Shown: one piece after another, positions 14,534 to 61,900 of the stretch
Layout of the letters: every line of letters starts with the position of its first letter
Numbering within the stretch: the first letter of the stretch is position 1
NCBI RefSeq assembly: GCF_006345805.1
Contig: NC_043021.1
Coordinates: 434,001-498,000, forward strand
Direction of reading: 5' to 3'
Length of the DNA: 64,000 nucleotides
Origin: Octopus sinensis
Lineage: Eukaryota
Made by a program: the position numbers and the translations under genes
The notes under the pieces: model-generated
Told to the model about the DNA's origin: nothing
The model's input: the letters and a program-made list of their open reading frames with translations, nothing else
Databases searched by the model: none

Positions 14534-14690
14534 TAATATAACCAGAAGAGAAAAATCGGAACAAGCAAAAAACGAAGACATGTGTAGATATATTAGCATA
14601 ACAGATGTATTAGAATAAGAGATGTATTAGTATATATATATATATATATAAGCTAAAATAGAAGATACGATTAATAAAAATTTATATATA
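12210..14690. repeat. Tandem array of ~110 bp cores separated by variable (TA)n runs, about 13 units
   Basis: Core AAACCAGAAGAGAAGACG...GAAACACGAAGACAGTTGGTGTACAAAAC...GATGTATTAGTAT at ~12321, 12455, 12701, 12841, 13000, 13158, 13251, 13397, 13555, 13699, 13831, 14020, 14540. Confidence 0.9.
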
Positions 14691-14691
14691 T

Positions 14692-29968: not shown

Positions 29969-30545
29969 CCAGGGTGGGCTAAAAAGTTCATAGTCTGATC
30001 AAAGTATTCTCATGGAACGTGACTGAATGAGGTTAAATTTTCAACATGGTCCCTCTTGTGGCCCACACACTTCTTCCATCGATGTTGCAGTGATTGGATC
30101 CCATTGATAAAGAAGCTTTCATCCTGTTGCTAAAAAAAAAGTCACTAACAGCAGATATGACTTGATCATCACTACAATATTGCTTCCCAACCAACAGATG
30201 ATAGTCAGATGGGGCCAAATCAGGAGAATAGGGACAGTGATGAACCAGTTCAAAGCCATAGTCATGCACAGCAGCCATTGAAACAAAGGACTTGTGTGCT
30301 GGAGCATTGTCCCAGTGAAACAAGACCCCTTTCATCAGTTTTCTTGGATGCTTGGTCTTTATAGCCTTTCGTAACTGCCTCAGCAACTTGGCATCGTCTC
30401 TCCATTGATGGTGTGTCCCTTTTGAATTGAGGCCATCACCACCCCTGCAGATGAAATGACCTTGGCCTACTTTGTAGCAAGTGACGAATCCACTACATGG
30501 ATTGTCTTTTTGTCACTGAGTCAAGGTGATGAAGCCAATCCCCAC
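29969..30545 (-). mobile_element. Mariner 3' half
   Basis: FHWDNAPAH...HCPYSPDLAPSDYHL (ORF 30033-30386); TIR-like TA|CCAGGGTGGGCTAAAAAGTTCATAG at ~29969. Confidence 0.85.
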
Positions 30546-32142: not shown

Positions 32143-32316
32143 TCAAGAAATAGTGATGACTACTTTGTTGGGCCGTTTCAGCTGGCTTTCTCGTACCAAT
32201 GCTGCTAACATGCTGTTTTCATTCATTAATAATTCAGAAGCTTTATCAAATTCCACAATTCTACCTTGATCTAATACCATAACACGGTCATAATCATTTA
32301 GATGAGTCAGATGATG
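32143..32316 (-). CDS. ABCC terminal exon: H-loop to stop
   Basis: ttccag| HHLTHLNDYDRVMVLDQGRIVEFD...VVITIS*; TGA at 32145-32143. Confidence 0.92.
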   Translation of the reverse strand, partial: HHLTHLNDYDRVMVLDQGRIVEFDKASELLMNENSMLAALVRESQLKRPNKVVITIS

Positions 32317-32599
32317 CTGGAAAGTAAAGAAAACATTGCATATAATGACAGAATTAAGAATCAAAAGACATCTCCAATACCACACCACACACACACTTAG
32401 TGTTCCCACAATGCAACACTACACATCACCTTACACAATATAACTATCCACAATGTTGCCACAACATGTGTGCGTGCACACATATCACCTTTTATAATAT
32501 ATCTTAAAGGACCAAGATGCTTGACACCTCACTGTACTCAAGAAGGCCCATACCCCACAGCAGAAGCAATAAGGCTGCTCCCTCTGGTGAAGATGATTT

Positions 32600-32800
32600 A
32601 CCTGCAAGAGTCTTGTGCAGTACCACATAAAAACACCCAGCATATTCTGTAAAGTGGTTGGTGTTAGGAAGGGCATCCAGCTGTAGAAACCATAGCAAGT
32701 CAGACTGCAGTCTGGTGCAGTTCTGCAACTTGCCAGCTCTGGTCAAACCATCCAATTCAGGCCAGCAGGGAAAACAGACGTTAAATAACAATGATGATCT
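32600..32800 (+). mobile_element. Short RTE 3'-UTR copy (also ~31080-31200 +, 41410-41600 -, 47830-48073 +)
   Basis: TTAGGAAGGGCATCCAGCTGTAGAAAC...GGAAAACAGACGTTAAA + (GAT)n shared with the 3' end of the RTE at 55063-55400. Confidence 0.75.
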
Positions 32801-33865
32801 TAACCCTACATAATACCCAGATTATTTGAAATTATCACACTGTCCCTAAACTTTGTGTCCTACCAGTAAATGATGGTCTCAGGTTAATGTTTCCATCTGT
32901 GAAACATTCCTTACCATTTTAGGAGCAACCTTCAGTTCTAAAGAGCTGCCTACACACAATTGAGTCTTTCAACTTGGAAGACAACATGGCTTCTGTTTGT
33001 TAACACTTAAGAATGAACAAGCTAATTTATCAACCAGGTACAGGAATTACTATAATTAATGGGAGTGTGGAGAAGCAAAGGATAATTTAAGAATTGAATT
33101 AGAATTTAGTAACAATTGGTTAGTAAGAGGACTTAGTCTAAAATTCATTTGAAGGAGGAGAGATATAGTAAAATGTTTTTTTTATGAAGGAATAACATTT
33201 TTTCAAATCAATAGTGGAGGCATATGACTTAGTGGTTAGGGTGTTCGACTTATGATCTTGAGATTGTGGTTTCAGTTCCTGGTTTGGGGAACGTGTTGAG
33301 TTCTTGAACAAAGCACTTCACTTCACATTGCACTATTCCACTCAGCTAGAGAACGAGTAACCCTGCAATGGATTGGCATCCCATCCAGGGAGGAATGCAT
33401 ATGCCACAGAAACTGGGGAATCTGGCCTCTTTAAAGAGTATTGTGGACTCATCAATAAGGGATTGGATTCACAAATAAGGGGTTGGACTCACCAGTAAGG
33501 GGTTAGACGCACCAGTAGGGGGTTTGACTAAAACTACAAGTCAATGGATTGGACACTTTTGCCAGCACAAATCCGTCTGCCCTGGATCAGCTGACATTCT
33601 GCATTTGAGAGCATTGTTGATTTACATTGCTGTGTTCAAATCTTACCTTTGCTGTGGTTTGAAGAAATACTTGTCAAGCTATACACAATGCCTCCAAATC
33701 TACACACACACACATACACATGCACAATGTAGGAGGCACTTACATATGCACTAAGGAAATCTGAGTTATTTCAATGAATATATGTTTAAATAATTAGTTT
33801 TAAAATAAATTTAAGTTAATTCAATCCTTTAATATATTCAGGATTTGAAAATAAAGTTCACTCAC

Positions 33866-34012
33866 CAAAGTCACAAGAACGGTGGAATCCCTGAACACAG
33901 TGCGGATGAGGTCCTGAATGGTTTCCTCCATCAAGGCATCATCGTTAGTGTGTTCCTGCTCCACAATAACTATTTTACTGTCTCTCATATAAGCTCGAGC
34001 AAAACAGAAAAG
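33866..34012 (-). CDS. ABCC exon: NBD2 Walker B/D-loop (degenerate)
   Basis: ttacag| LFCFARAYMRDSKIVIVEQEHTNDD...VFRDSTVLVTL |gtgagt; phase 0 to 0. Confidence 0.92.
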
Positions 34013-34206
34013 CTGTAAAAGAAACAAGGATTACATATATTTAAGTCACACACATAATGAGGAAACTTTCCTAGGGAATCAAACACAATGACTGTACAAG
34101 GCTGGTTTTGAACATGCGATCTTGTGGTCAATTATTTAATCCAATACCTTCATGTAATAAACATCGGCTAAAGGAAATGAACAATTAAAACATTTGAAAA
34201 TCTCAC

Positions 34207-34256
34207 CTGTCTTTGTCCAATAGTAAATTCCTTGCCTTCATGGAGGACAACAGTTT
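34207..34256 (-). CDS. ABCC exon: NBD2 signature
   Basis: ccacag| TVVLHEGKEFTIGQRQ |gtgaga; phase 1 to 0. Confidence 0.9.
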
Positions 34257-36164
34257 CTGTGGAGAGAAATATCACTGGTAAAAATAACCATATAAACGAT
34301 AATTTCAACTGTTTGGGCACAAATTACAAGCTACATCTGACAGTGTTTAGGGTAACACAGATTAGAGGCTAGAGGTAAGTGTTTGAGATAACACAGATTA
34401 TGGGTAATATAGCTTACAACATTTGGGGTAACACAGATTACAGAATTCAGACAAAATAGTGTTCAATATTAAGGGCAACTTCGACTGTGTACTTCTGAGT
34501 GTCTCTTTGAAATGTTAAGCAGTTATACAGGAAATCCTAATTAACCACATTGAAGGGGTCTCGTGGTTATAGCTGCTAAAGGAGAGTACCCAGATATAAT
34601 ATAAAGTGCTGACAGGGGCAGCCTTAACCTTGCAGAAACTGTGTGTGTCTGCATGCGCGCGCACACACACAATAAACACAGATAGGTTATTGTTTATTCT
34701 TCACCTAACTTGGAACCTTCCATGCATTTGGATCTGGAGTTTGTGCAGTGAGTGTACCCCCGTGTGACTTTGAATGCATACTGTGTATTCTGTAAGTACT
34801 TGTGTGTGTGTGCATAACTGGAAGGACAAATCCATATTTACTTTAGTAAGTATGTATATGTCAATATCCCCAACTCTACCTTGCTGCTTTTGCTATCTAA
34901 ATACTCTGATTCCACCAAATCCTGAAAATTTTAATTCTATATAAATATATATATACAGATAGATGGGTGTGTTGTGATCGTGAGATAAATATTAGTATGG
35001 AATACCAAAAAAAGAAAAAAAAAAGTCTTTCTAATGACTACAACTTGCACTTGTTTTCGACACAATGATAGGTGCACCATGTACCCCATTCCATTATCCA
35101 TTAGTGTTCTAAGTTCTTCATCAATCATAGCAGCATTGCATTTCATTAGTTTTGACCATGGTCTTGGAAGGACACTGCACAGTTCATCATGCCATGTGTC
35201 AATTTGGCTGGTGAGCAACCCTGGCTGCCTCAATCAATGCCTTTATTAAACAGCAACTATTGTCTTATTTGTCAACTGAAATAAGGTTGCTACAGAGTTA
35301 TTTACTGGTCATTTTCTGCAATTTGAGTGAGCTTCAAGAGATGCTAGGGACTTAGTGAGGGTCCAGGTTTCTCATCCATAAAAAAAAGATTGCTGCAACT
35401 ATGAAAATTCATTGGCTGTAAGTCCAGATAGGCTTCATTTCATTGGATTTACTTTCTAGCTAAGGCCTCTGTGTATTTTGCTGTCCATTTATGTTCTTGC
35501 TACTAGTGAACTGTGGTCAGTTAATTATCAGGACACAAAAACCAATTGAATGGTTTCAACAGAGAGAAAATTGACCTACATTCATAAGGCAACTATGTTC
35601 ACCAAACCCATTTCTTCTCTATAAGTTGAACCAGTTACCAATGAGTTCTGCAATGGCTTTTTAAGACCAATGAGGGAATTCTACCTGCTAGAAATAACAG
35701 CCAAATCTCCCCTCCAATTACACCCTAACATGTGAACAAAAGAAAAGTACATTAATATTATAACAGACCTCTCTATGAAGATCGTGATTTGAACAACTAA
35801 GATAAAGGTTGACCTGGGGCTAAACAACAACACCAGATGTAAGCTTCCCTGTCTACCTTTGGTTTAATGTCCAAATTAATGAAATTCCTCTGAGTAACGA
35901 ACTGCTGACTGAGAATAATAACAGGAAACCCTTCAGAATGTGTTACATTCAATCAACATATTTAAGTGTCAAAGTAGTTTAAAATGTCTTCTCAGAGATC
36001 TTAATCAGGTTAATCAGCTGTTGAAAGTATATGTAAGATCAGTTTGGAGTTTACCTATGAGGGTCAGTTTGACATTATATATAACAAAAGGAAGGTGTGT
36101 GTGTGTGATTATTGATGTGTCAAGCAATGGCAATCCTAAAAATACAACATCTCTATCAACATAC

Positions 36165-36268
36165 CCAGTTTATGGGGAAGCTCTTGAACTGTGCTTTTCA
36201 TTTGAACTGCATTCAAAGCTTCCCAAATCTCTGGATCTTTATATATGCCTTCTGGATCGAGATTGAAC
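36165..36268 (-). CDS. ABCC exon: NBD2
   Basis: tttcag| FNLDPEGIYKDPEIWEALNAVQMKSTVQELPHKL |gtatgt; phase 2 to 1. Confidence 0.92.
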
Positions 36269-36870
36269 CTGAAAAACAAAACATTTCCGATATCGGCATT
36301 AACTGACTCTCTTTATGTTTGCTTGGTTTTAGTTTAATACAGGTTTACTTGATATACAAATTCATAGATTTACACAAGTTGTTCAAACTGTTATTTTAAT
36401 AAAATTTGATAAAGCTTCATTTGAGTAGAAGCTTAACTGTGTCTTAAGTTTAAAGTGACAGGCTAGATGTATCTGGCATATTTGAGCTACGACATTTGGC
36501 CAGTTATTTCTGTATCTACTTCAACACAGTTTCAAATTCCAGAGTCTATTCATACCTCAACCCTGAACCTCAGTGGTTTTATACTCACCTCTGATAAAGT
36601 ATGTATTTCTACAGCAACAAATCAATCGGTTAGTAATCTGCCACTCTATCCAATTTAGCAGTTCGTCTCTTTAGCTAATTTACTATTTACTCCTAAAGTA
36701 TTACTCAAAGAAGATTAAAATTTTTGTGAAAAGCTGAACAACTGCAAATGTAAACACAGATTCCATTTGGTCCACATCACAGTTTTACAATGATAGATAC
36801 AATTTATAGAGACAGACAACATGTTGAGTTTGGAATAATGTAGATTTGAAATGATGAATGAGAAACTCAC

Positions 36871-37058
36871 CTGACTGTTCCGTCAAACATGATTGGGTCG
36901 TGGGGTACAATGGAAAGACGAGATCTCAGAACTTGGGACGGCACAACTGATATGTCCTGATAGTTTATCAAGATCTTTCCTTCATGTACATGGATCATCT
37001 TGAATAAGGATAAGATGAGAGATGATCGCCCACTCCCAGCATGTCCACAGAAGGCCAC
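36871..37058 (-). CDS. ABCC exon: NBD2 Walker A and Q-loop (degenerate)
   Basis: ttcaag| VAFCGHAGSGRSS...LRSRLSIVPHDPIMFDGTV |gtgagt; phase 0 to 2. Confidence 0.92.
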
Positions 37059-37866
37059 CTTGAAATATAGAAAAACAACAAACTGCTGTGTAACTGGCAG
37101 CAATAGAAGGAACACACACAACCACTGCCACCATGACTAACCACCTCTAGACTAGTCATCATCCCAGCACTAACATTACTAAATATAACCATCAACATCT
37201 TCAGCATCACTCCACCTTTGCATAACATACACAAACCAACAAAAGAGCTGATGTGTGGTCACGTGACCAGCTAGATAGGGGTAATGTCACATGACCAGCT
37301 AGATAGGGTAATGTCACATGATCATGTGATTGACCAAATTACTGAATGTTATACATCACTGGTCACAATGCACCTCGCATTGTTTTAGCTTTCGAATTAT
37401 GATCGGAAGGCTCGTCCATCATGGGGTTATTCATTTACAATTGTATAGACTAGAGCAATATGAAATGAAGTGTTCCTAATCTGGGAATTGAACCCACTAC
37501 CTAGCAATTGTAAGTGCAACACCCTAACCACTATCTCACATACCCTCACAGATATGGTAATATAATCTTCCTGAAATAACACACTACCATCAAGACATAC
37601 ATTATTTCTGAAAAAAATAAATGACAGGTGGAACGTCTTTGATCAAAAGTTTGTTTGATCAGGGTTATATATATATCGCATATCCCACAATATTACCAGA
37701 CAAATCTTTAAGCTATCCACCATCTTTACAGTAAGTCCTTCTCTACCAGTTCTCGCTAGATGTATGGAGAGGAGTCACTCCCAAAGAAATGATCAGTTAT
37801 TACCACAGCGTAAGTCTGTAATTAACCACCTCTACCATCACCATCACAAACAACAAGATTTGTTAC

Positions 37867-37997
37867 CTTTTCCGCATCTTTTATAGTAAAAGTGGCATCC
37901 ATAACAACGGGGCTCTGTTCAGGATCATAGTTTAAGGCAATATGTTGAAATTCAATGTCACCAACATCTGGCCAAGACTCAGGTACCTCAATGCAAT
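37867..37997 (-). CDS. ABCC exon: start of NBD2
   Basis: ttacag| CIEVPESWPDVGDIEFQHIALNYDPEQSPVVMDATFTIKDAEK |gtaaca; phase 1 to 0. Confidence 0.92.
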
Positions 37998-40091: not shown

Positions 40092-40209
40092 CTGGTGGAT
40101 CTACTGAAGGTGGTGTCTCACAAGCATATTCCACAACTCTTTCTAAAGACGTGATGTTGTTCTCTAGTTCTGTTGCATGACGTGCTATCATGTTCACATA
40201 AATTGGCAT
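40092..40209 (-). CDS. ABCC exon: end of TMD2
   Basis: tttcag| MPIYVNMIARHATELENNITSLERVVEY...DPP |gtgtgt; phase 0 to 1. Confidence 0.88.
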
Positions 40210-40881
40210 CTGAAATAGATAAAAATTCCACAGAGCAATGATGAAAAAATACATCATAGTTTCCATCAGAAATATATTACTACATAGATGTACAGTAAAA
40301 TAAAGATAAAATCATCCAAGAAATTTCTCTACTCAAGAAGAGAACCAAAGAAATATGAATTAGCATGTATATATATTATACGGGTCGTACATATAAAGGT
40401 TTTACACAAGAGTGGCTCAGCTGCCCTGAAAATTACAACATTTATCTCCAGATTAATGTTGGGCATTATAATGACATCAGTCACATTGTTTCTGATTTCC
40501 AATTTACATTCACAATAGACAGTGATGTTTTGTATTTTGGTCAGTGGAATGTTTAAGATTTCGGTAAGAACTAAAATTTCATTCACTGCATCACTATCCA
40601 GTCAGAAAAATACTGGAGGTTAGTACTGGAAATCTGATATTAAATCGCTTTTTAACTATTCAATCAGAAACTGGATGCCAGTGTTGCATATGTGAATCAG
40701 TTACACAATTCTCCAATGCAGGTATTGTTTATCAGAAATATACAAGAGCTGACCAGTCCAGCTGGAAGAGGAATTTCAGAGATGACTTGTAGGGGTCAGC
40801 AATGCTTTCAGCAAAACTAAGAAAAGAAATGTGAGCCTGTGATTCTACCAAAACATGAAGAACTCATCAAATTCTACTTAC

Positions 40882-40995
40882 CATGAGAACATTCAACATA
40901 CAGAGTCCAACTAATGTGCCATTTTCTTCGTTTTGAATGGAGAAAGCCAAGCTACCAAGTGATGCCAGTAATAAAATAAGGCATCCAAGGAAATC
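40882..40995 (-). CDS. ABCC exon: last TMD2 helices
   Basis: attgcag| DFLGCLILLLASLGSLAFSIQNEENGTLVGLCMLNVLM |gtaagt; phase 0 to 0; too short for the ORF track. Confidence 0.88.
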
Positions 40996-42536
40996 CTGCA
41001 ATAAGAAGTTCTTGTTACACAAGTTAACCATTTAAATGGACAGAAACATTATTCTGGGAAGCTTATAACTGTTGTTATTACAACTGCTGAATGTGATCAA
41101 CTGGCAGAATTGTTAGCACCATGGCAAAGATGCAATGAGACAGTTGTTCACACACTTTACATTCTTAGATTTAATAAAGTAAAGGATCAGTTAAGGCTGG
41201 GGTCAACTTCATTGACTTACACTACCAACCCACAAAAATTGCTGACCTTGTACCAAAATTAGAAACAATTACTATTTCTAAAGCAGCAGCAATAGTAGTC
41301 CAAGTTCAATTCTGCCATATTTCACTTAGCTTTTTATCATTGTGGGCCAATAGACACCAGAGAAGTAATGAAGCCAATTGTCCCATGTCTCTCTTTCTCC
41401 TCAGCAAATCTATGTTGCAGTGTCATCATCACCATCATCATTATTATTTAACATCCATTTTCTATACAGGAATGGATTGGAACGTTTGACAGGAGCTGGC
41501 GAGCCAGAGAGCTGCCCCAGGCTCCAACTGTCTGTTTTTTCATGGTTTCTATGGCTGGAGTGATCTGGCTGGGTTTTTTTTACATGGCACCAACACAAGA
41601 GTTTTATACATGGCAGTAGTGCTACAATTAGGAATTATATATTCTTACCAATATGGTCAGACAACTGAATACTGGGCCTTTGAATCCCTATGTCATATTT
41701 CTGACAATATAAAAGCCTTTGTTGTTTTTACTAAGACTTTATGATGTACAAACACAAAGGGTTTTTTTTTTAACGTTCCTGGTTTTGGGTAAAAGAAAAT
41801 ACAGGAGGATTATTTAATTATGATTTTATTCAAAATATTCCCCTCTCAGATTCACACACTTATTGCAGTGGTCCTTTAGTTTTTCTAAGCCCTGTAAAAG
41901 AACTCGGAAAGTTGGGCCTCCAGCCAGGCCTTTCACAATACTCTTAAAGCCAGGAACTTTACAGCACTCCCTTGTAAAGAAATGGGTGCATGTAAGAGAT
42001 GTCAATTGTCCCAACAGAGTAAACATCAAAATATTAAGGATCTGTCAACCTGTAAGGATTACAGTGGTTAGGGGGTGAGGTGGAGATTACAGTTTATAGG
42101 TTTTGAGTTTTTATACAGATGCTGGGGATGTGTATATCCCCTACTAAAAACCTATTTCACTTCATTATAATAGATACCATGAGGAGGTAGAAAAAGTCCT
42201 ATAACACTGTTTCATACAGGGCTTCTCAAATGGATTAAATAAAGGGTCTGGCTTTAGTAAAGTTGGAACCCCTGAACATTCACTCTATAGTTTTAACATC
42301 TTAATTAACCAAATCAGTGAGTCATTAAATGAAAACTTAATCTCCATATGGTGGGTCGACAAACTGGTTTTCTGTTGGTTTCCAATAACAACTATTTGCA
42401 ACTAAATGGATTCAAACAGTGAAACACAAAGTATAGACTTGTGGCGATCCATCCAAGTCATCTTACTTGACACAACCAACAGACAACCTCTTGAGTAAAA
42501 TGAAATAATGTTGAGATTAGAAAGAGTAACACTTAC

Positions 42537-42639
42537 CAAGCGTATGGCTAACCACCGATTCACAGCATGAATGTACAGGAAGACGACATTGAATACGTTT
42601 ATTGCATGGGTAACATAACCAGTAAACCAGTACTGTACC
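42537..42639 (-). CDS. ABCC exon: TMD2
   Basis: tttcag| VQYWF...AVNRWLAIRL |gtaagt; phase 2 to 0. Confidence 0.9.
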
Positions 42640-42990
42640 CTGAAAATAGAATTTAAAAACAGGCAACTACAAGTCATGTGTTCTATCAGCTGTATGATAC
42701 TGAGCTACTAAAAATTAGGGACTCAACTAATTTTCAGTTTTAATTACCATTGCTTAATCATTTACACCACTCTTCCTAATTTGACTTCAGTAATTTTTAG
42801 ATTTTTGAGAGGAGAGCTAACTTACCTTGTTATTCCACTTCAAGGAAAATACAGGTTATGATCATGTATTTTGATATATGAATAGTAAAGAACTGGTGAA
42901 ATAACTAATTAATTAAATCAGAAATTAGTAACAAGCTGATAAATTAAATTAGTTGTGACAAAAATTAGTAATGGAAAACATCAAATATAC

Positions 42991-43083
42991 CTGTAAGCTC
43001 GAATTGTCCGAAGTCCACTGAGAATTTCTGAGAAATGGTTAAAAAGAGGCAGTTTGGTAAGATTCTGAAGACGATTGAGCTGT
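42991..43083 (-). CDS. ABCC exon: TMD2 intracellular loop
   Basis: ctatag| QLNRLQNLTKLPLFNHFSEILSGLRTIRAY |gtatat; phase 2 to 2. Confidence 0.9.
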
Positions 43084-43651
43084 CTATAGAATAGAAGAGA
43101 AATAATTCACTGTAGAGAGTTGATTAATGAAAACTATAGAGTACATTACCAACTCCACGCACGTGTGTTTGTGTGTGTCAGCTACACTTTGCTGATAAAG
43201 TATATTCCATCTGTTTTGATTCCAACTCCTTCCAATACCTAATTAGTTGTCTTTCATTATGATCTTCTTCTCACTCACCTTCATCTTGGTCTGTATTTCT
43301 TTTCCCACTTCCTTCTACACACTACCTCCCAGACCACAACCTGGCATGTTGATGACCTTTCTACTTCTCCATATCAAAATATTTCTTTCTTAACATCTAT
43401 TACTTCTTGGAATATCAATTTTCATCATCACTTCCTTCCTTAGCATAATTCAATCAGAAACCCCTAATTATAACTGAAAATGAATAAAGACCATTTACTT
43501 TATTGTCTTTAGTTTTATAGATTTTTTTCTTTCCACATGCCTTACAAGTAAATTCTTTTATTCATGTGACTTTTCCCTACGTTGACAAAGAAATAAGTTA
43601 CTAAATATATATACATATGTATATATACATACGTAGATATAAATATATGTA

Positions 43652-43694
<43 letters not shown>

Positions 43695-43866
43695 CTGTGT
43701 CTGGGGAGATGCATTTTCTTAGGAAAATAAGAAATAAGTGGAAATTTTACGGGTGAGTGTGTTAAATTATAAGGCACAAAAAGAAAATGACTGTCCCCAG
43801 ACACAACAGAATATGCTTCAACACACGAACTCACATAAAGAATCTTGCAAACTTAATCCAAAAACG

Positions 43867-43917
<51 letters not shown>

Positions 43918-44084
43918 TATATATATATATATATACAAAATATGGGATTTAGTTCAAAGGTGATCTAAACGACCAAGTACACTAGGTAAGTGCTGTAACG
44001 GATTACAACGGTCCCAAGGTTATAGCCGAGATGGTAGTTATGGAACCATTGCAGATTTCCTATATGGCGGATATAGAATTGTTT

Positions 44085-44482
44085 AAGAGGACAACAAACG
44101 TTAAGGCAAGGCAAACATTTCAAGTCAGATACATTATTATTACTGGAAAAAAAAAAATTCAGTATGGGATATTCCATCATCGGACACAAATAGGGAAAAT
44201 GAGAAGGATTCAGATTAATGAAACGACGACATAGAGGACAGGAATAAAGGAATAAGGAGATGAAGAGAAGAAAATAGAACTTAGAAAGTTGAATTGTGAA
44301 CTTTTATGCCTCTTTCTTCATATTCCTTAATTCCTGTCCTTTAAGTCATCATTTCATTAATCTATACCCTTCTCATTTTCCCCATTTGTCTGATGACAGA
44401 ATATCCCAGAAACAGCTGTAAGACTTTGAATTTTTTTTCAATAAAAATAATGTATATGACTGGAGATGTTTGTTGTCCTCTA
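44085..44482. mobile_element. Foldback element with ~190 bp imperfect arms in an ABCC intron
   Basis: AGAGGACAACAAAC...GGGAAAATGAGAAGG...AGGACAGGAAT..AGGAATA mirrored in reverse complement around ~44290. Confidence 0.8.
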
Positions 44483-44971
44483 GATACTGAGAGGTAATAT
44501 TTATCCTTACTTAAACATGGAGGTTCTGTTACAATAAACTATACAACAATAAAACACTTCAAGAGAAACTCTCATATTGACTTTTGGTGCAAAAGGAACT
44601 CTAGCTCCTTATCCCTAGTCACGTAAACAACATTCTTTCTCTATTATTCCTAATTGTACATCTAACACTTCAGCCGTACTCCATCCTCTTTCTCTATTTC
44701 ACAACATTTCCTCTGTACTTCATGTTCCCTCTTAGCTTTATATTTACATAAAACTCGTTTTCAAAATAGTCACTCCTATTTTTAACTATTAAAGTCTGTC
44801 AAGTACATTAATTACTTAGCAAATACAGAGAGCAAAACTTATGGTAAACCACTTTTAATTTAATGTAGTCCATTCCTATACACACACACACACACACACA
44901 CAAGCATCTACCATGCATAAACAAGCCTTGTTTGACACAGGAAAGCATTAAGAAGACAGAAAAAGACTAAC

Positions 44972-45129
44972 CTGATGGAAGGTCGGTAAAATTTGAAGAG
45001 CAGATAAAAGAGTATTATTATAGGAACAGTGGCCAGTACAAAATAGGGCATAGCTATAGAACAGATGACCAGCACTATGATTGCTTGTAGTAAGAACCTC
45101 AACAATAACTCTATGGTTGTTGGTAGGAT
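44972..45129 (-). CDS. ABCC exon: TMD2
   Basis: tttcag| ILPTTIELLLRFLLQ...MPYFVLATVPIIILFYLLFKFYRPSI |gttagt; phase 0 to 2. Confidence 0.88.
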
Positions 45130-46384
45130 CTGAAATAAACAGGATAGAAATGGATATAAAATGGTATGTAAAAGTACAAAATCATGGTGGTGCTCCAGCA
45201 TGACCACAGCTACATGGCTGAAATGAATAAAAGCGTGTGTGTGCACAGTGTACTGAAAAGATGCTCTTGAGCAAGCACAAACAGGACATCTACTCCTTCA
45301 GTCCAGGGCAAAACTTTGAGTAGACTCAATTTTGATATAAGGAACATACACAAAGAGAGACTTATCAATACAGTATTCTATGGCCAGATTCCCTTCCTGA
45401 TGCCAGTTGTTACTTGTATCCCAATAAATAAGTTACTTATTCCACTGGAATCTGAATGGATGGATGAATACCAAAATCTCTCAAGTGCTTTGAGGTCAAT
45501 GCCTATAGAGAGAAGCAAATGGCATGGATGGAGGAGGAACAAGCATAGAATTATTGCAAATATGTTGAACAAGAACTTAATGCAATTAATGATACGTCAT
45601 TGGAAAAAGTTCAAAAGAATATGACAAACAAAAAAAATTGCATTTATCATTTGGAGAAATAGTATCTAGATTTATATCTCACAGCTTAGTGGTGCAACAA
45701 ACAGAAACTGATAAAATAAGTCATTAAAAATTAAGTACAAACGATGTAGGGGACTAAAACCTTTCACAGTCCCTACCACCAGCATGGTTGCCGTCTGACA
45801 ACGGAAACAGAGATCAGAATAAACATCTACAGCTAGACATATACAAATGTGTGTCGGTGTGAATACATATTTAGAGTAAACACTTGTGGGCTGAGGGTGC
45901 CCTCTCTAAATGCAAGGATCAATAGCTCGTCAGGCAGTGAAACATCTTTCCAGGTGTTTTGGCCCCTTCCACCATGATACCAGAAGTCCTCAGGGCCACT
46001 CACTGATGCAGGCAACACAACTCTTACACAACAATACAAGCTTTGTTAGTTCAGATGTTGTGACCCTAAGCCAGATGATTCTACCATCCTCAATGCAGAT
46101 GTTCATACCTATACGTGTGTGTGTATGTGCATATATATATTGTTCAACCCATGCCAACATGAAAAGCAGACATTGAACATTGATGATGATGATATATATA
46201 TATATTATATAGAGGGCACTATTACTCATAAATGCCACATGCTAGCATGTAGCATTTATGTGCAATAGTGCCCTCTATATAATATAAATAAATAAATTTA
46301 AGGGAAAAAATTGATGTTTTTTTTTTCTCTTATGAGGTTTTTCATGCTAACTACTTTATAAATTCTTATGAAGATTTTATCCTA

Positions 46385-46432
<48 letters not shown>

Positions 46433-46927
46433 GTTCATTTTCTTCATTTTGCTGTAGTGGACAGGTTGGAGAGGTAATGTCATTTTCGAAGCAGTGTTTT
46501 TTTATAACCAGATGATCTCCATGTTAGTTTACCATTTCTTGTTTTACAGATAAGAAAGGAAGTTTCCGTTCCATTATTTCAAGAGCACAGTTATTGCACC
46601 AAAATATTCACCAGGAACGTAAGTACATTCACAACATATTTTTTTACTCAGGCAGAAATGATAACTTTCTGGTATGTGCATACACACACACGCACACATA
46701 CAGATGTAAATATACGGATGCATAAACACAAACACATATTACCCAGTGCCCCTGTATATCTTGTGAGACAATGGATCTATAACTAGAATGACCCTTTCCA
46801 AGGTGCAGACCTGGATAAGGTTCAGGACGTCAACCGCTTTCCATGGCACCAATGCTGAATGAGAGAGAAGTGAGTGGAGAAATGCTCAGCTGACCAACAC
46901 CACAGACACTCAAAACACTGAACTTAC

Positions 46928-46997
46928 CTGGTCAACAATACGACTGTCTGCTGAGAATGTATTGAGAATAGTGGCAGGTGGGGTTGACTCAAAGTGA
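46928..46997 (-). CDS. ABCC exon: TMD2 intracellular loop
   Basis: tttcag| HFESTPPATILNTFSADSRIVDQ |gtaagt; matches the FFDTTP.GRILNRFS.D...VD motif; phase 2 to 0. Confidence 0.88.
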
Positions 46998-47420
46998 CTG
47001 AAACAGAAAACAGAACAGTCAAACACTCACATATTGAATGTTATAGGTAACAGGTAACATCAATCAGTTCTAGTCAAGGTACACTTAGCTACAAGCCTTA
47101 GTTTATACTTTCAAGACATGGATTGCCCCTGGCCTACTTAATATCCAAACATACATACAGTAGGCATATAGGCCCATAACATATTCCTAAATACTTGTCA
47201 AACCTTCACTCACCAACACACCACAACCACACAGATACACTATATCCTCTCACTGCCTTTTATACTTATACTACACCAGCTCCTGCTCACAGGAACTAAA
47301 AAGCTATCTATCACCTCACATACCAGCTTTTATTCTTCTTTTCCTTCTAATCATGCCTCATTCCCATAATCCCTGTAATAAGCTACAGTCAAGAGAAGAA
47401 CTCGATACTGTTTCACTTAC

Positions 47421-47587
47421 ATCACAGGTAAACTGGTCAAATAATGAAGCATCTTCTGGTGAAGTCGGTCAGCTCCTCTCACTGTGGTGAACTTTAGTAA
47501 TAGACCAGTCAACACTGTGACTGCCACACAGCTTAAACAGATGACCATATATAAACCAATATAGTAGGTGTGGTTGACAGGTGTGTG
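47421..47587 (-). CDS. ABCC exon: TMD2
   Basis: ttgcag| HTPVNHTYYIGLYMVICL...GADRLHQKMLHYLTSLPV |gtaagt; phase 0 to 2. Confidence 0.88.
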
Positions 47588-48607
47588 CTGCAAACAGAGA
47601 AGGAAAAAAAAGATCAACATTGTTACATCTTATGTGTGATTAGACTGTAGAAGATTGTCACCAGAAATAAAATTTATGTTTAGTGTGAAAGGGATAGACC
47701 CATGAAGTGGTGTGAAAGGCTCTTGAGACACTGGGCCTCACTGAGGAAATGACAAGTGACCAGGAGTTGAGGTGATTTGCTGTACTTGAGAAGATGTGTT
47801 GAGCTAAGAATAATCATGGTCATCCATACATACGTGCATGTCCTTTGCAGGTGCCGGTGCCACATGAAATGCACTCGTGCCAGTGCTGCACTGATGCACC
47901 CATGCCAGTAACACATTAAAAGCATCCACCACATTCTGTAAAGTGTTTGGCATTAGGAAGGGTATCCAGCCATAGAAACCATGCCACAACAGACAGTTGG
48001 AGTTTGGACAGCTCCTGTCAAGCCACCCAACCCATACCAGCATAGAAAGTGGACATTAAACAATGATGATGATAGATATATATATGCATATATACATATT
48101 GCATGGCCAGGCTTAAACAAGTAGTGTAGCACTCAATCAGCACTGTCTTTCATTTGAGTAAATGTATTATAATACAAATGAAAAGTTTTGTGAAATACAG
48201 CTGCCCAAGGTTTCCTGGTCAAAATATTAATTAACTTTGCCAGTTTTCAAGCTGATAAAAACAACAAGATGGTTTGTCAGCTATGTTCAATGTAGCTGAC
48301 ATATGAATAGGAACACTTATATAGAAGACAGAAAGGAACACAAAGAAAATAACCAGCATTACAACAAACATTTCACAGATCAAAAATGCATAAACCAGAT
48401 GGGAATGGTTTAAGATGTGTCCAGCAGTCTGGCTTTAATCTCCATTAAGCTGTATTTTAAAATGTGGACATAAAGAAAAAAATCTCATTCCTGGAATTTA
48501 CACAGTCTTTAGAGGTTCCTTAAAAGGTGCAGTTTTAAATGAATATATTGGACATCTTTTTGACTTGTTAATATAGGGTTCAGTCTTGGAAAGGGTTTTC
48601 CATTTAA

Positions 48608-48803
48608 CCCTTTTGATACAAAACCACCTCTGGTGCTGTGGTACAAATGTCTTGTTCTCAAAAATTCTGAATTAAAATCTTCCATCAAACCTTAGTCACA
48701 ACTTATGTTCCTAACACTAGCTTAATGATAACTACTAAGTTATTTTACTAAATTCTTTGTTATAAACACAGAGCATCTTAACTGAAATATGGTAACAAAA
48801 GGG
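48608..48803. mobile_element. piggyBac-type MITE
   Basis: TTAA|CCCTTTTGATAC ... GTAACAAAAGGG|TTAA. Confidence 0.8.
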
Positions 48804-49025
48804 TTAATATTGTAGGAGCATGTGTGTGTTTGTATATATATTTCATACATAGCCAGGAATTCCACCTGCATCCCACTTTTTAGAAGAGGTGACTAAAAAT
48901 AATGGTATCAAGGACACCCATCGATAAAAGACTACCTCAATAAGTCTCATCCAGCAAAATGGTAAAACAGATGCAAAAGTGATGATGATGTACCATGATT
49001 AAAAGGTGAAAAAAAAACAACCTAC

Positions 49026-49273
49026 CTTTGGACTGGTGATGGAATTATTCTGATGTATTTCATAATGCACAGAGTGTTTTGAGTACATCCAGTTAGCAAG
49101 CCAAAGATCAGAGGTGACTATTAAAGTGTGTTTGCACAAAAGGAGTAACACCAATAATAGAACCAGTGAAGAGGAGCAGAGTTTCAGGAATTCAAAACAC
49201 ATACCAGTGGAGATTGAACCAAGGTCACGCAGATCCAGTTTTAATGATGGACTTTCTTCTTCTTCATTGTCCT
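49026..49273 (-). CDS. ABCC exon: end of linker and first helix of TMD2
   Basis: DNEEEESPS...DLGSISTGMCFEFLKLCSSSLVLLLVLLLLCKHTLIVTSDLWLANW...SPK |gtaggt; NAGNAG acceptor. Confidence 0.8.
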
Positions 49274-52206: not shown

Positions 52207-52254
52207 GTTCAAAACATGTCTCCGTTGTGTAGTCATCAAGGGGAAGTAAGTCAT
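52207..52254 (-). CDS. ABCC 48-nt linker exon (tentative)
   Basis: ttttttcag| (D)DLLPLDDYTTETCFE |gtaaag; phase 1 to 1, frame-neutral so could be skipped. Confidence 0.45.
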
Positions 52255-58442: not shown

Positions 58443-58530
58443 CTTCTTCCAATCCATCATCCTCAAGACTATTTTCTGTCATTACAGACATCTGTGATAC
58501 CTGACGACTAATTGGTATCCCAAGGTTTGA
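58443..58530 (-). CDS. ABCC exon: NBD1-TMD2 linker
   Basis: gtgtttcag| SNLGIPISRQVSQMSVMTENSLEDDGLEE |gtaagt; phase 0 to 1. Confidence 0.7.
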
Positions 58531-58957
58531 CTGAAACACAAATATATACCAGTAATATACAGGGGTTTAATCACACAACAAATACGTGTGCATGTGTATA
58601 TGCATGTAGACATATATTGTAGACGCAGCTATGTTGAGGTATGTGTATATGTTTTTTTTCTTTTGCATGTATATGTGTGTGTAGAGTTAGGTGTATGTGT
58701 GTGTCAACAGTTCCAATTTCATTTCAGATATGGGGTTGTGCCTTTGACTAAGATACAGGAGTAAATTTTTCTAGACAGGCAAACTGAGCAAAACAAGAAA
58801 ATCCACGTTTCCCATAGGTGCTTCTACACAGTTGCTCATTCTGTCGGAAAAAGCAGCAAAATCTGCCTCATATCACACTCTACTGTCTCACAGAATGATG
58901 TATTGGATAGAGTAATACTTTGCTTAGTCAAACAGAGCCAACATGAACACACATACT

Positions 58958-61900
58958 CACACCGACACATGGGGCTAACACCAACACATTGAGATAACAC
59001 CAAAACATGGACTAACACCAAGACATGGGGCTAACACCAACACATGGGGACACAACCAAAACAGGAACAAACACCAACACATGGGGCCAACACCAAAAGA
59101 GGTACTAACACCAATACATGGGGCTAACACTAAAACAGGGACTAACACAAATACATGGGACTAATATCAAAACATGGGGCTAACACCAACACATGGGACT
59201 AACAACAAAACATGGGGATAACACCAACACATGGGACTAACACCAATACATGGCGATAACACCAACACATGGGACTAACACCAATACATGGGGATAACAC
59301 CAACACATGGGACTAACACCAATACATGGGGATAACACCAATACATAGGGATAACACCAACACATAGGAGTAACACCAACACATGGGGCTAACACCAAAA
59401 CAGGGACTAACACCAACACATGGGGCTAACACCAACACATGGGGCTAACACCAACACATGGGACTAACACCAACACATGGGGCTAACACCAACACATGGG
59501 AGTAACACCAACACAGGGACTAACACCAACACAGGGACTAACACCAACACATGGGGCCAACACCAACACATGGGGCTAACACCAACTCATGGGGCTAACA
59601 CAAAAACAGGGACTAACACCAACACATGGGTTTAACACCAAAATAGGGACTAACACCAAAACAGGCACTAACACAAACACATGGGACTAACACCAAAACT
59701 GGGTCTAACACAAACACATGGGGTTAACACCAAAACAGGGACTAACACCAAAACTGGGACTAACACCAACACATGGGGCTAACATGAACACATGGGGCTA
59801 ACACCAACACATGGGGCTAACACCAAAAAAAGGGACTAACACCAACACATGGGCCTAACACCAAAACAGGGACTAACACCAACACATGGGGCTAACACCA
59901 ACACATGGGGCTAACACCAACTCATGGGGCTAACACCAACACATGGGGCTAACACCAACTCATGGGGCTAACACCAACTCATGGGGCTAACACCAATTCA
60001 TGGGGCTAACACCAACACCTGGGACTAACACTAAAACACGGACTAACACCAACACATGGGTTTAACACCAAAACAGGGACTAACACCAAAACAGGGTTTA
60101 ACACAAACACATGGGGCTACCACCAAAGCAGGGACTAACACATGGGGCTAACACCAAAACAGGGTCTAACACAAACACATGGGGCTAACACCAAAACAGG
60201 GACTAACACCAAAACTGGGACTAACACCAACACATGGGGCTAACACCAATACATGGGGCTAACACCAAAACAGGGACTAACACCAACACATGGGGCTAAC
60301 ACCAACACAGGGACTAACACCAACACAGGGACTAACACCAACACATGGGAGTAACACCAACACATGGGGCTAACACCAAAACAGGGACTAACACCAACAC
60401 ATGGGGCTAACACCAAAACAGGGTCTAACACAAACACATGGGGCTAACACCAAAACTGGGACTAACACCAACACATGGGGCTAACACCAAAACACGATCT
60501 AACACAAACATGGTGCTAACACCAAAACAGAGACTAACACCAAAACTGGGACTAATATCAAAACAGGCACTAATACAAACACATGGGGCTAACACCAACA
60601 CATGGTGCTAACACGAACACATGGGACTAACACCAAAACAGGGACTAAAACTAACACATGGGGCTAACACCAAAACAGGGTCTAACACAAACACATGGGG
60701 GCTAACACCAAAACAGGGACTAACACCAAAACTGTGACTAGCACCAAAACAGGGTCTAACACCAACACATGGGGTTAACAGCAAAACAGGGTCTAACACA
60801 AACACATGGGCTAACACCAAAACACAGTCTAACACAAACACATGGGGCTAACACCAACACATGGGGCTAACACCGACACAGGGACTAACACAAACACATG
60901 GGGCTAACACCAAAACAGGGACTAACACAAAAACTGGGACTAACACAAACACATGGGGCTAACACCAAAACAGGGGCTAACACCAAAACAGGGACTAACA
61001 CCAAAACAGGGACTAACAACAAAATGGACTAACACCAACACATGGAGCTAACACCAAAACAGAGACTAACACCAAAACAGGGACTAACACCAAAACTGGG
61101 ACTAACACCAAAACAGGGACTAACACCAAAACATGGACTAACACCAAAACAGGCACTAATACAAACACATGGGGCTAGCACCAAAACAGGGTCTAACACA
61201 AACACATGGGGCTAACACCAAAACTGGGACTAACACCAACACATGGGACTAACACCAAAACAGGGACTAACACCAACACATGGGGCTAACACCAAAACAG
61301 GGACTAACACCAAAACTGGGACTAACACCAACACATGGTCTAACACAAACACATGTGGCTAACACCAAAATCGGGACTAACACCAACACATGGGGCTAAC
61401 ACCAAAACTGGGACTAACACCAACACATGGGGCTAACACAAAAACAGGGACTAACACCATCACATGGGGCTAACACCAAAACAGGGGCTAACACCCAAAC
61501 TGGGACTAACACCAACACATGGGGCTAACACCAAAACAGGGACTAACACCAACATATGGGGCTAACACCAACGCATGGGGCTATCACCAAAACAGGGACT
61601 AACACCAACACATGGGGCTAACACCAACACAGGGACTAACACCAACACAGGGACTAACACCAACACATGGGAGTAACACCAACACGTGGGGCTAACACCA
61701 AAACAGGGACTAACACCAACACATGGGGCTAACACCAAAACATGGACTAACACCAAAACAGGCACTAATACAACACATGGGGCTAGTACCAAAACAGGGT
61801 CTAACACAAACACATGGAGCTAACACCAAAACAGACTAACACCAAAACTGGGACTAACACCAACACATGGGGCTAACACGAACACATGGGACTAACACCA

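What the first reader, a model, noticed from the sequence alone, without database searches (positions are those of the whole stretch)
32143..37997. SUR-like ABCC with an intact but predicted catalytically dead NBD2 (Walker A K>R, Q-loop Q>H, Walker B DE>EQ)
Seen: spliced NBD2 reads GHAGSGRSS (consensus GRTGSGKSS), IVPHDP (IIPQDP), FTIGQ (FSVGQ) and IVIVEQEHTNDD (ILVLDEATASVD, gap-free). The H-loop His and D-loop Asp are retained, with no stops, frameshifts or broken splice sites over 16 exons. The Arg codon is CGA, two changes from a Lys codon, which suggests an old substitution. Established: in ABCC proteins the NBD1 Walker site is the degenerate one and the NBD2 Walker site is the hydrolytic one; Walker A K>R and Walker B E>Q are standard hydrolysis-disabling mutations, and SUR uses NBD2 Mg-nucleotide binding to gate Kir6 channels. 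Inference: this is a maintained pseudo-ATPase ABCC that probably cannot pump, and may act as a nucleotide-insensitive channel subunit, receptor or scaffold in a cephalopod lineage.
Basis: partly seen in the sequence, partly recalled or inferred. Interest (0 to 1): 0.82.

Follow-up and report, generated by a model that had tools for sequence, protein, structure and literature searches.

The report
Cephalopod SUR with rebuilt, non-catalytic ATP site
Octopus, argonaut, cuttlefish and a second decapodiform carry one intact, expressed and strongly conserved sulfonylurea-receptor (SUR, ABCC8/9) gene in which the catalytic residues of the normally hydrolytic ATP site are replaced on both sides, offering a natural test of whether SUR-type regulators need ATP hydrolysis.

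Summary
On the minus strand of window 32143-37997, six GT-AG exons encode an NBD2 reading GHAGSGRSS / IVPHDP / FTIGQRQ / IVIVEQEHTNDD / TLHHL. The 16 exons in the window match 100% of Octopus sinensis XP_036369028.1 ("ABCC9-like").

It is not a pseudogene:
- The gene has about 36 exons over 86 kb and is intact.
- It is the only SUR-type locus found in the genome.
- Intron-less transcripts exist in decapodiforms.
- dN/dS is 0.05-0.08 overall, and NBD2 is the slowest-evolving domain.

It is the mollusc orthologue of SUR. Its PDB score is 925 bits against SUR2 and 558 against MRP1, and it sits in the mollusc SUR clade with support 99.

All 16 cephalopod sequences checked share the substitutions. 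None of about 146 nearest non-cephalopod ABCC representatives has any of them.

New here:
- The NBD1 signature that completes the same site is also changed (LSGGQ to LTEGQ).
- NBD1 gained no catalytic Glu and lost its H-loop His.
- So both ATP sites look non-hydrolytic.

The changes arose in a burst on the cephalopod stem and then froze.

The most likely reading is a non-enzymatic, probably still nucleotide-binding, regulatory subunit. Nucleotide insensitivity and a Kir partner are untested. I rate it a new variant of a known kind.

The parts
37867..37997 (-). NBD2 exon 1: end of the TMD2-NBD2 connector and the A-loop region (...CIEVPESWPDVGDIEFQHIALNYDPEQSPVV...DAEK). The A-loop Tyr is kept.
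   Evidence: Boundaries are AG/GT. 100% match to XP_036369028.1.
36871..37058 (-). NBD2 exon 2: Walker A GHAGSGRSS (Arg codon CGA at 37028-37026) and Q-loop IVPHDP (His codon CAC at 36902-36900).
   Evidence: Every aligned non-cephalopod relative has Lys (146) and Gln (147).
36165..36268 (-). NBD2 exon 3: helical subdomain (FNLDPEGIYKDPEIWEALNAVQMKSTVQELPHKL).
34207..34256 (-). NBD2 exon 4: ABC signature FTIGQRQ, which belongs to ATP site 1. FSVGQRQ in decapodiforms.
33866..34012 (-). NBD2 exon 5: Walker B and D-loop IVIVEQEHTNDD. Glu GAG at 33961-33959 replaces Asp. Gln CAG at 33958-33956 replaces the catalytic Glu. The D-loop Asp at 33940-33938 is kept.
   Evidence: All 146 aligned relatives have D and E.
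32143..32316 (-). NBD2 exon 6: H-loop HHLTHL (His CAT at 32316-32314 kept), C-terminus and stop codon.
40092..49273 (-). Eight TMD2 exons: 49273-49026, 47587-47421, 46997-46928, 45129-44972, 43083-42991, 42639-42537, 40995-40882, 40209-40092.
   Evidence: All AG/GT. 100% match to XP_036369028.1.
58443..58530 (-). Linker exon (SNLGIPISRQVSQMSVMTENSLEDDGLEE) carrying a motif shared with gastropod SURs.
52207..52254 (-). Small 48-nt linker exon (DDLLPLDDYTTETCFE). It is present in O. sinensis isoform X4 and absent from the Argonauta and decapodiform sequences.
58955..63999 (.). Intronic minisatellite (18/37-bp unit, about 274 copies). It is not part of the coding gene, but it lies inside it.

Best explanation
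This is the 3' half of the single sulfonylurea-receptor (SUR, ABCC8/9) orthologue of coleoid cephalopods. The gene here is Octopus sinensis LOC 'ABCC9-like', at C25:466143-552534 on the minus strand.

Shown:
- The protein keeps the full SUR architecture: TMD0-L0-TMD1-NBD1-TMD2-NBD2.
- On the stem lineage of cephalopods the normally hydrolytic 'consensus' ATP site (site 2) was rebuilt on both of its faces.
- NBD2 face: Walker A Lys>Arg, Q-loop Gln>His, Walker B Asp-Glu>Glu-Gln, and the neighbouring Ala-Thr>Glu-His.
- NBD1 face: ABC signature LSGGQ>LTEGQ.
- Site 1 stays degenerate as in every ABCC (Walker B Asp-Asp) and has also lost its H-loop His.
- After this burst of change the domain froze. 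It is now the slowest-evolving part of the protein.

Inferred:
- Neither site hydrolyses ATP at a meaningful rate.
- NBD2 is kept for a non-enzymatic job. Most likely it binds nucleotide at equilibrium, and/or dimerises with NBD1, and passes this on to a partner channel docked on the conserved TMD0-L0 module, as SUR does for Kir6.
- In short, it is a SUR that works as a pure binding switch rather than a slow ATPase.
For: Identity as SUR:
- Full-length phmmer against the PDB gives SUR2 925 bits and SUR1 913 bits, against MRP1 558 bits. TMD0-L0 residues 29-357 align to SUR2B residues 3-332.
- The ML tree has a SUR clade with support 100. Inside it is a mollusc clade with support 99, made of the cephalopods plus (mussel,(snail,limpet)), with Lingula next.

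Real, intact, single copy:
- All exons are mapped and match RefSeq.
- The snail SUR TMD0 query hits only this locus in the 2.7-Gb genome.
- There are no alternative NBD exons in 164 kb.

Expression:
- Intron-less 5.2-kb ORFs sit on 5.5-7.5-kb Logan contigs from several sequencing runs.
- One run number falls inside a Sepia esculenta larval RNA-seq series.

Conservation of the odd residues:
- They are identical in 16 cephalopod sequences from O. sinensis, O. vulgaris, O. bimaculoides, Argonauta, a Sepia-like lineage and a second decapodiform.
- Synonymous codon turnover occurs at these sites: CGA/AGA/AGG, GAG/GAA, CAG/CAA.

Selection:
- O. sinensis versus O. bimaculoides gives omega 0.082 overall (dS 0.116) and 0.079 for NBD2.
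- The decapodiform pair gives omega 0.046 overall and 0.018 for NBD2.

Uniqueness:
- All aligned nearest ABCC representatives keep K, Q, D and E (146-147 each). 147-148 of 149 keep the S and G of the NBD1 signature.

Burst then freeze:
- NBD2 stem branch is 0.985 substitutions per site, against 0.267 summed over the six branches inside cephalopods. The ratio is 3.7, against about 1.5 for the other domains.
- TMD0-L0 is not accelerated.

Background:
- All ABCCs have a degenerate site 1 and hydrolyse at site 2. Walker A K>R together with signature changes marks the degenerate site of ABCG5/G8 (PMC7756269).
- In SUR1, NBS2 Walker A Lys, Walker B Asp and E1506 mutations alter Mg-nucleotide activation. 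Whether hydrolysis is needed for activation is an open question (PMC4699857; PMC3114383).
Against: - No biochemical data exist. Loss of hydrolysis is inferred from motifs only.
- Walker A K>R and Walker B D>E are conservative. An invariant Glu sits two residues after the Walker B position (IVIVEQEH) and could in principle act as a relocated base.
- Nucleotide binding at site 2 is not demonstrated. The signature Gly>Glu could instead repel the gamma-phosphate.
- No Kir6-type partner was identified. The best PDB matches of the octopus Kir ORFs are Kir2/Kir3, and all have GYG filters.
- Octopus transcripts were not examined directly. Expression in Octopus rests on the RefSeq models and on decapodiform transcripts.
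- dS is saturated in the deeper comparisons.
Confidence: 0.7

Rival explanations
1. Nucleotide-blind scaffold. Site 2 no longer binds any nucleotide. The Glu in the NBD1 signature and the Arg/Glu/His set occlude or replace the phosphate pocket, perhaps forming a direct salt-bridged NBD1-NBD2 latch. NBD2 is conserved only as a structural or protein-interaction module, so the subunit is insensitive to cellular ATP/ADP at that site. This is essentially the first reader's reading.
For: - Both faces of site 2 changed together.
- 18-19 of 56 near-universal NBD2 positions are replaced.
- A negative charge is introduced into the signature loop that normally contacts the gamma-phosphate.
Against: - The P-loop glycine scaffold GxxGxG, the two serines after the Arg, the A-loop Tyr, the D-loop Asp and the H-loop His are all kept and invariant. 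That is unexpected if the pocket were unused.
- The replacements are chemically conservative rather than random.
- NBD2 is the most constrained domain.
Confidence: 0.2
2. Still an ATPase, with a rewired catalytic centre. Arg substitutes for Lys, the Glu at the Walker B Asp position coordinates Mg2+, and the invariant Glu two residues downstream (IVIVEQE) or the new Q-loop His acts as general base. The protein then cycles like an ordinary SUR or ABCC.
For: - Invariant E and H follow the Walker B residues (IVIVEQEH).
- The H-loop His is retained.
- Strong purifying selection on the whole site.
Against: - No known ABC ATPase uses such an arrangement (my own knowledge).
- E>Q at the catalytic base and K>R in Walker A are the standard hydrolysis-blocking mutations (PMC7756269).
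- The partner signature motif is also degenerate.
- The combination K>R plus signature change is the hallmark of a known inactive site in ABCG5/G8.
Confidence: 0.09
3. Decaying pseudogene, or an assembly or annotation artefact.
For: Only the unusual motifs themselves. A second, 99%-identical copy of the 3' end exists on contig C8321.
Against: - Intact ORF over about 36 exons.
- Omega is 0.02-0.08.
- Identical residues in independent genomes and transcript assemblies of at least six cephalopod taxa.
- The C8321 copy carries the same exons with the same scores, so it is probably a haplotig.
Confidence: 0.01

Closest known systems
Vertebrate sulfonylurea receptors SUR1/SUR2 (ABCC8/ABCC9), regulatory subunits of KATP channels
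   Same: - Same architecture, TMD0-L0-TMD1-NBD1-TMD2-NBD2.
- Best full-length PDB matches: 925 and 913 bits.
- Same clade in the tree.
- Degenerate site 1 with Walker B Asp-Asp.
- Conserved TMD0-L0, with 36-37% identity to turtle SUR1.
   Different: - Site 2 is non-canonical on both faces (R, H, EQ in NBD2; LTEGQ in NBD1).
- The NBD1 H-loop His is lost.
- The protein is about 200 residues longer, with inserts after L0 and before NBD1.
- No Kir6-type partner has been identified.
- Turtle SUR1 has GRTGSGKSS, IILQDP, FSQGQRQ, IFIMDEATASID.
Other mollusc and lophotrochozoan SUR orthologues (Bradybaena similaris, Lottia gigantea, Sinanodonta woodiana, Lingula anatina ABCC9)
   Same: - Sister sequences in the tree.
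- Shared linker motif ...SQMSVMTE..ED.G.
- TMD0-L0 is 47% identical to snail.
   Different: All of them have canonical K/Q/DE in NBD2. Those with NBD1 sequence have LSGGQ plus an H-loop His. The degeneration is therefore cephalopod-specific.
ABCG5/ABCG8 degenerate nucleotide-binding site
   Same: A natural inactive site marked by Walker A Lys>Arg together with a changed signature motif (PMC7756269).
   Different: - It belongs to a different ABC subfamily and fold (type II exporter).
- There the other site remains catalytic and the protein is a sterol pump. Here the remaining site is the ABCC-type degenerate one.
CFTR (ABCC7)
   Same: An ABCC that is not a pump. It has one non-hydrolytic site, with an H-loop deviation in NBD1. 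NBD dimerisation drives a gating output rather than transport.
   Different: - CFTR keeps a catalytic site 2.
- Its own TMDs form the pore.
- It scores far lower against this protein (about 370 bits).
Engineered Walker B E>Q and Walker A K>R/M mutants of MRP1, CFTR and SUR
   Same: The same residue changes are used experimentally to block hydrolysis while allowing ATP-bound NBD dimers. SUR1 E1506 variants change Mg-nucleotide regulation.
   Different: Those are laboratory or disease alleles. Here the changes are the fixed wild type, combined, and conserved across coleoids.

Membership tests
SUR subfamily (ABCC8/9) | Long ABCC architecture with TMD0-L0 preceding TMD1-NBD1-TMD2-NBD2 | tested here: met
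   PDB alignment blocks: residues 29-357 to SUR2B 3-332, 419-693 to 339-613, 848-1087 to 660-912, and 1176-1783 to 952-1543. Pfam ABC_membrane and ABC_tran each occur twice.
SUR subfamily (ABCC8/9) | Phylogenetic placement with ABCC8/9 rather than the MRP, ABCC4/5 or CFTR groups | tested here: met
   The SUR clade has support 100 and contains turtle SUR1, amphioxus, sea-star, spider, Lingula and mollusc sequences. The cephalopods sit inside the mollusc subclade, support 99. SUR scores about 920 bits against about 558 for MRP1.
SUR subfamily (ABCC8/9) | Consensus (hydrolytic) NBS2: Walker A Lys, Q-loop Gln and Walker B Asp-Glu in NBD2, plus LSGGQ in NBD1 | tested here: not met
   The sequence has R, H, E-Q and LTEGQ. 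This is a functional hallmark of characterised SURs, not a criterion of descent. Orthology stands; the biochemical equivalence is in doubt.
SUR subfamily (ABCC8/9) | Assembly with Kir6-type pore subunits into an octameric KATP channel | not testable with these tools
   Kir genes exist in the genome. Their best matches are Kir2/Kir3, and all have GYG filters. No interaction data exist.
SUR subfamily (ABCC8/9) | Binding of sulfonylureas and K-channel openers | not tested
   Drug-site residues were not examined.
Catalytically competent ABCC exporter | At least one ATP site with Walker A Lys, a Walker B catalytic Glu, an H-loop His and an intact partner signature | tested here: not met
   Site 2 has R/EQ with LTEGQ. 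Site 1 has K and DD but no catalytic Glu, and its H-loop is Pro/Ser/Thr.
Processed or unitary pseudogene | Disabling lesions, neutral evolution (omega near 1), no transcripts | tested here: not met
   The ORF is intact. Omega is 0.018-0.082. Spliced transcripts exist in decapodiforms.

The most novel reading that the evidence does not exclude
Coleoid cephalopods turned their only SUR into a fully non-enzymatic ABC protein. Site 2 would be either a high-affinity, non-hydrolysing ATP (or ADP) sensor, or a nucleotide-independent Arg-Glu latch between NBD2 and the NBD1 signature. Channel regulation would then run purely on binding equilibria. That would make it the first natural ABCC, and a rare full-length ABC exporter-fold protein, with no hydrolytic site at all. 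It would also be a ready-made natural experiment on the long-debated question of whether ATP hydrolysis at NBS2 is needed for SUR/KATP function.
Probability: 0.3. Interest if true: 0.8.

Novelty: new variant of a known kind. Interest (0 to 1): 0.62.

Why it matters
Whether MgATP must be hydrolysed at NBS2 for SUR to activate its channel is still discussed (PMC4699857). Point mutations at exactly these residues cause human insulin-secretion disorders (PMC3114383).

A whole animal lineage has carried R/H/EQ plus LTEGQ as its only SUR, under strong constraint. By my own estimate from published clocks, this has lasted since the octopod-decapodiform split a few hundred million years ago. That shows a SUR scaffold can be useful without a canonical catalytic site.

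It also supplies a set of co-adapted substitutions that can be moved into vertebrate SUR or reverted in the cephalopod protein. This bears on three questions:
- how degenerate ABC sites evolve, since here both faces changed together in one burst and then froze;
- what invertebrate SURs do at all;
- possibly, how cephalopod excitable tissues couple metabolism to excitability.

The gene itself is already annotated as 'ABCC9-like'. What appears to be new is the state of its ATP sites.

Tried and rejected
I used a contiguous 1200-residue stretch of a decapodiform transcript instead.
- The first homologous-protein run failed on a region bound. To get round the length filter I doubled the half-protein and scored only the second copy.
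- A search with NBD2 alone, looking for fragmentary or intermediate (for example Nautilus-grade) sequences, found nothing between 45% and 100% identity. The changes cannot be dated relative to the nautiloid split.
- I looked for a second, canonical SUR. The snail NBD2 query hits many other ABCC genes at 45-59% and is uninformative. The SUR-specific TMD0-L0 query hits only this locus.
- I looked for mutually exclusive or alternative NBD exons in 164 kb and found none.
- I looked for a Kir6-type partner. Kir genes are present, but none is Kir6-like by PDB ranking or by selectivity filter.
- Literature searches for cephalopod or mollusc SUR, Octopus ABCC families, and ABC proteins with two degenerate sites gave nothing relevant to this gene.
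- Rfam and tRNA scans of the window found nothing.
- I considered RNA editing as a rescue and rejected it by reasoning. A-to-I changes of CGA, CAC, GAG or CAG cannot give Lys, Gln, Asp or Glu, and transcript assemblies carry the same residues.
- I did not run structure prediction. The tool returns no coordinates and no ligand, so it could not test the ATP site.
Full report
**Where the window is and what the gene is**

The window is Octopus sinensis chromosome-scale contig C25:434001-498000. The finding lies on the minus strand.

I read the DNA and defined six exons with canonical AG/GT borders: 37997-37867, 37058-36871, 36268-36165, 34256-34207, 34012-33866 and 32316-32143. Their translation is a 263-residue ABC nucleotide-binding domain (Pfam ABC_tran, E = 4.5e-17).
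- Walker A: GHAGSGRSS
- Q-loop: IVPHDP
- signature: FTIGQRQ
- Walker B and D-loop: IVIVEQEHTNDD
- H-loop: TLHHL

Ten further exons upstream in the window encode TMD2 and part of the NBD1-TMD2 linker. My TMD2+NBD2 model (the 14 exons from 49273 to 32143) is 100% identical over its whole length to RefSeq XP_036369028.1, 'ATP-binding cassette sub-family C member 9-like isoform X4', and the two linker exons reproduce its sequence exactly.

I fetched 100 kb upstream and mapped that protein onto it. The gene runs from C25:466143 to C25:552534. It has about 36 exons over 86 kb, and all are intact. Its coordinates cover only NBD2.

**Is it a SUR?**

Yes, and it is more than SUR-like.
- Against all PDB chains, the full-length protein scores 925 bits with SUR2 and 913 with SUR1. 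It scores 558 with MRP1, about 535 with ABCC4 and about 370 with CFTR.
- The match includes the SUR-type N-terminal TMD0-L0 module (residues 29-357 aligned to SUR2B 3-332).
- A HMMER scan of 1.84 billion representative proteins, using the decapodiform orthologue as query, returned as nearest non-cephalopod relatives the ABCC8/9-named proteins of Lingula, a land snail, a freshwater mussel, a limpet, amphioxus, a sea star, a spider and a turtle.
- In a maximum-likelihood tree of 46 ABCCs, a SUR clade (support 100) is separate from the MRPs. Within it the five cephalopod sequences are sister to (mussel,(snail,limpet)) with support 99, and Lingula comes next. This follows the species tree.
- The snail SUR TMD0-L0 hits only this locus in the 2.7-Gb assembly.
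- A 99%-identical copy of the 3' end on small contig C8321 looks like a haplotig.

So this is the single SUR orthologue of the octopus.

**Are the odd residues real, old and maintained?**

The same residues occur in all 16 cephalopod sequences I could collect: O. sinensis, O. vulgaris, O. bimaculoides, Argonauta hians, a Sepia-like lineage and a second decapodiform lineage.

The decapodiform sequences come from Logan assemblies of sequencing runs, where a 5.2-kb ORF is uninterrupted on 5.5-7.5-kb contigs. The octopus gene has about 36 exons over 86 kb, so these contigs must be spliced mRNA. One run number falls inside a published Sepia esculenta larval RNA-seq series (the species assignment is my inference).

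Codon usage at the critical sites differs between lineages while the amino acid stays the same:
- Arg is CGA, AGA or AGG.
- Glu is GAG or GAA.
- Gln is CAG or CAA.

This is direct evidence of purifying selection on the substituted residues.

Pairwise dN/dS values:
- O. sinensis versus O. bimaculoides (unsaturated pair, dS 0.116): omega 0.082 for the whole protein and 0.079 for NBD2.
- The two decapodiform lineages: omega 0.046 overall and 0.018 for NBD2.
- NBD2 has the lowest dN of all domains in the deeper comparisons whose dS could be computed.

The pseudogene alternative is excluded.

**How unusual is it?**

Among the 148 nearest non-cephalopod ABCC representatives, each standing for a 50%-identity cluster, every aligned sequence has the Walker A Lys (146), Q-loop Gln (147), Walker B Asp (146), catalytic Glu (146) and H-loop His (146).

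Cephalopod NBD2 departs from 18-19 of the 56 positions that are at least 90% conserved in those relatives. The relatives themselves depart from a median of 1 and a maximum of 10. The departures cluster in and around Walker A, the Q-loop, Walker B and the H-loop.

**What NBD1 shows**

NBD1 keeps its Walker A Lys, its Q-loop Gln and the ABCC-typical Walker B Asp-Asp. No catalytic Glu has been gained, so there is no compensation.

Three other things changed in NBD1:
- The ABC signature is LTEGQ in all cephalopods. In the 149 relatives, 148 have the Ser and 147 have the Gly of LSGGQ.
- The D-loop Asp is Glu.
- The H-loop His is Pro, Ser or Thr.

In the head-to-tail NBD dimer of ABC proteins, the NBD1 signature completes the ATP site built on the NBD2 Walker motifs (established family knowledge; PMC7756269). 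The 'consensus' site 2 has therefore been altered on both of its faces, and site 1 is even more degenerate than usual. By sequence, neither site has a catalytic base. The pairing of Walker A Lys>Arg with a changed signature is also how the known inactive site of ABCG5/G8 looks.

**Tempo**

On a fixed topology, the NBD2 branch leading to cephalopods is 0.985 substitutions per site. That is about twice the whole snail branch. All six branches inside cephalopods sum to only 0.267, a ratio of 3.7. For TMD0-L0, TMD1, NBD1 and TMD2 the ratio is about 1.5.

Identity to outgroups tells the same story:
- NBD2: cephalopods 40-46%, snail 50-58%.
- TMD0-L0: essentially no difference between the two.

So the nucleotide-binding machinery was remodelled in a burst before the octopod-decapodiform split and has been frozen since. 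The module that in vertebrates docks on Kir6 evolved at the ordinary rate.

**Mechanism**

*Shown:* orthology to SUR, intactness, a single copy, expression in decapodiforms, strong constraint, and non-canonical residues on both faces of site 2 and in the H-loop of site 1.

*Established background:*
- ABCCs hydrolyse at site 2 only. Walker B E>Q and Walker A K>R/M are standard hydrolysis-blocking changes.
- E1506 substitutions reduce MgADP activation but largely spare MgATP activation.
- Whether hydrolysis is needed at all is debated.

*Inference:* the cephalopod protein does not hydrolyse ATP at a useful rate. I think it more likely than not that site 2 still binds nucleotide, or at least still mediates NBD1-NBD2 closure, for three reasons:
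- Five of the six key replacements are chemically conservative (K>R, D>E, E>Q, Q>H, S>T).
- The glycine and serine scaffold of the P-loop, the A-loop Tyr, the D-loop Asp and the H-loop His are all invariant.
- NBD2 is the most constrained domain.

The output would go through the conserved TMD0-L0 to a partner channel. That step rests on homology alone. The octopus has Kir genes, but the ones I examined rank Kir2/Kir3 above Kir6 and have GYG filters.

Rivals:
- A nucleotide-blind scaffold or latch. The signature Gly>Glu could repel or replace the gamma-phosphate.
- A rewired but active ATPase. An invariant Glu-His follows the Walker B pair.
- An artefact or pseudogene, which is excluded.

'Maintained, SUR-like, predicted hydrolysis-dead' holds up and is strengthened. 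'Nucleotide-insensitive' and the Kir link are untested. 'Cannot pump' adds little, because SURs are not pumps.

**Novelty**

The gene is already annotated, but only by an automated name. I found no paper in the searchable library on cephalopod or mollusc SUR or on these substitutions. I file it as a new variant of a known kind: a true SUR orthologue whose consensus ATP site has become non-canonical and is conserved as such.

**Limits**
- There is no biochemistry.
- Octopus RNA reads were not inspected.
- dS is saturated in the deep comparisons.
- No nautiloid sequence was found.
- The tree used a quick search with LG+G4.

Noticed in passing
window 58955-63999 (runs to the window end): A 5-kb minisatellite of about 274 copies of an 18-bp unit (ACTAACACCAACACATGGG, also read as a 37-bp unit). 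Its base composition is very strand-asymmetric. It lies inside the SUR intron upstream of the linker exon 58530-58443.
   Followed up: partly
window 55383-56486 (-) and 14662-16374 (+), with 17198-17833 (+): Reverse-transcriptase ORFs of retroelements: RVT_1 with a weak PHD-finger match, RVT_1, and a weak zf-RVT match. One lies inside a SUR intron and the others lie downstream of the gene.
   Followed up: partly
window 30033-30512 (-) and 28543-28899 (+): Remnants of mariner/Tc1-type DDE transposases, just downstream of the SUR stop codon.
   Followed up: partly
G000:C8321:10491-16345: A second, roughly 99% identical copy of the 3' end of the gene sits on a small unplaced contig, with the same exon matches. 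It is probably an uncollapsed haplotype rather than a paralogue.
   Followed up: partly
G000 contigs C9888, C9076, C12467, C8702, C8150: Small contigs carry long intron-less ABC-ATPase ORFs (170-264 aa) that match NBD2 at 30-42% identity. They look unlike the intron-rich octopus ABCC genes and may be bacterial or other contamination in the assembly.
   Followed up: no
window 58443-58530 (-); P0153, P0161: The linker exon encodes ISRQVSQMSVMTENSLEDDG. This Ser-rich and acidic motif is nearly identical in limpet SUR and recognisable in land-snail SUR. It may be a conserved regulatory (phosphorylation?) element after NBD1.
   Followed up: no
window 52207-52254 (-): A 48-nt exon (DDLLPLDDYTTETCFE) is present in O. 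sinensis isoform X4 but absent from the Argonauta protein and the decapodiform transcripts. RefSeq lists at least ten isoforms that differ mainly in linker regions.
   Followed up: partly
G000:C25:519338 region (NBD1 exons, outside the window; L009-L011): The NBD1 H-loop position is the only 'catalytic' position that varies among cephalopods (Pro in octopods, Ser or Thr in decapodiforms). That suggests this one residue is truly relaxed, while the site-2 replacements are fixed.
   Followed up: yes
G000:C21:7539010, C2:49093963, C6:23506826 and other loci (L021-L032): The octopus genome holds several intron-less Kir (IRK) ORFs, all with GYG selectivity filters. The two I ran against the PDB rank Kir2/Kir3 above Kir6.
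   Followed up: partly
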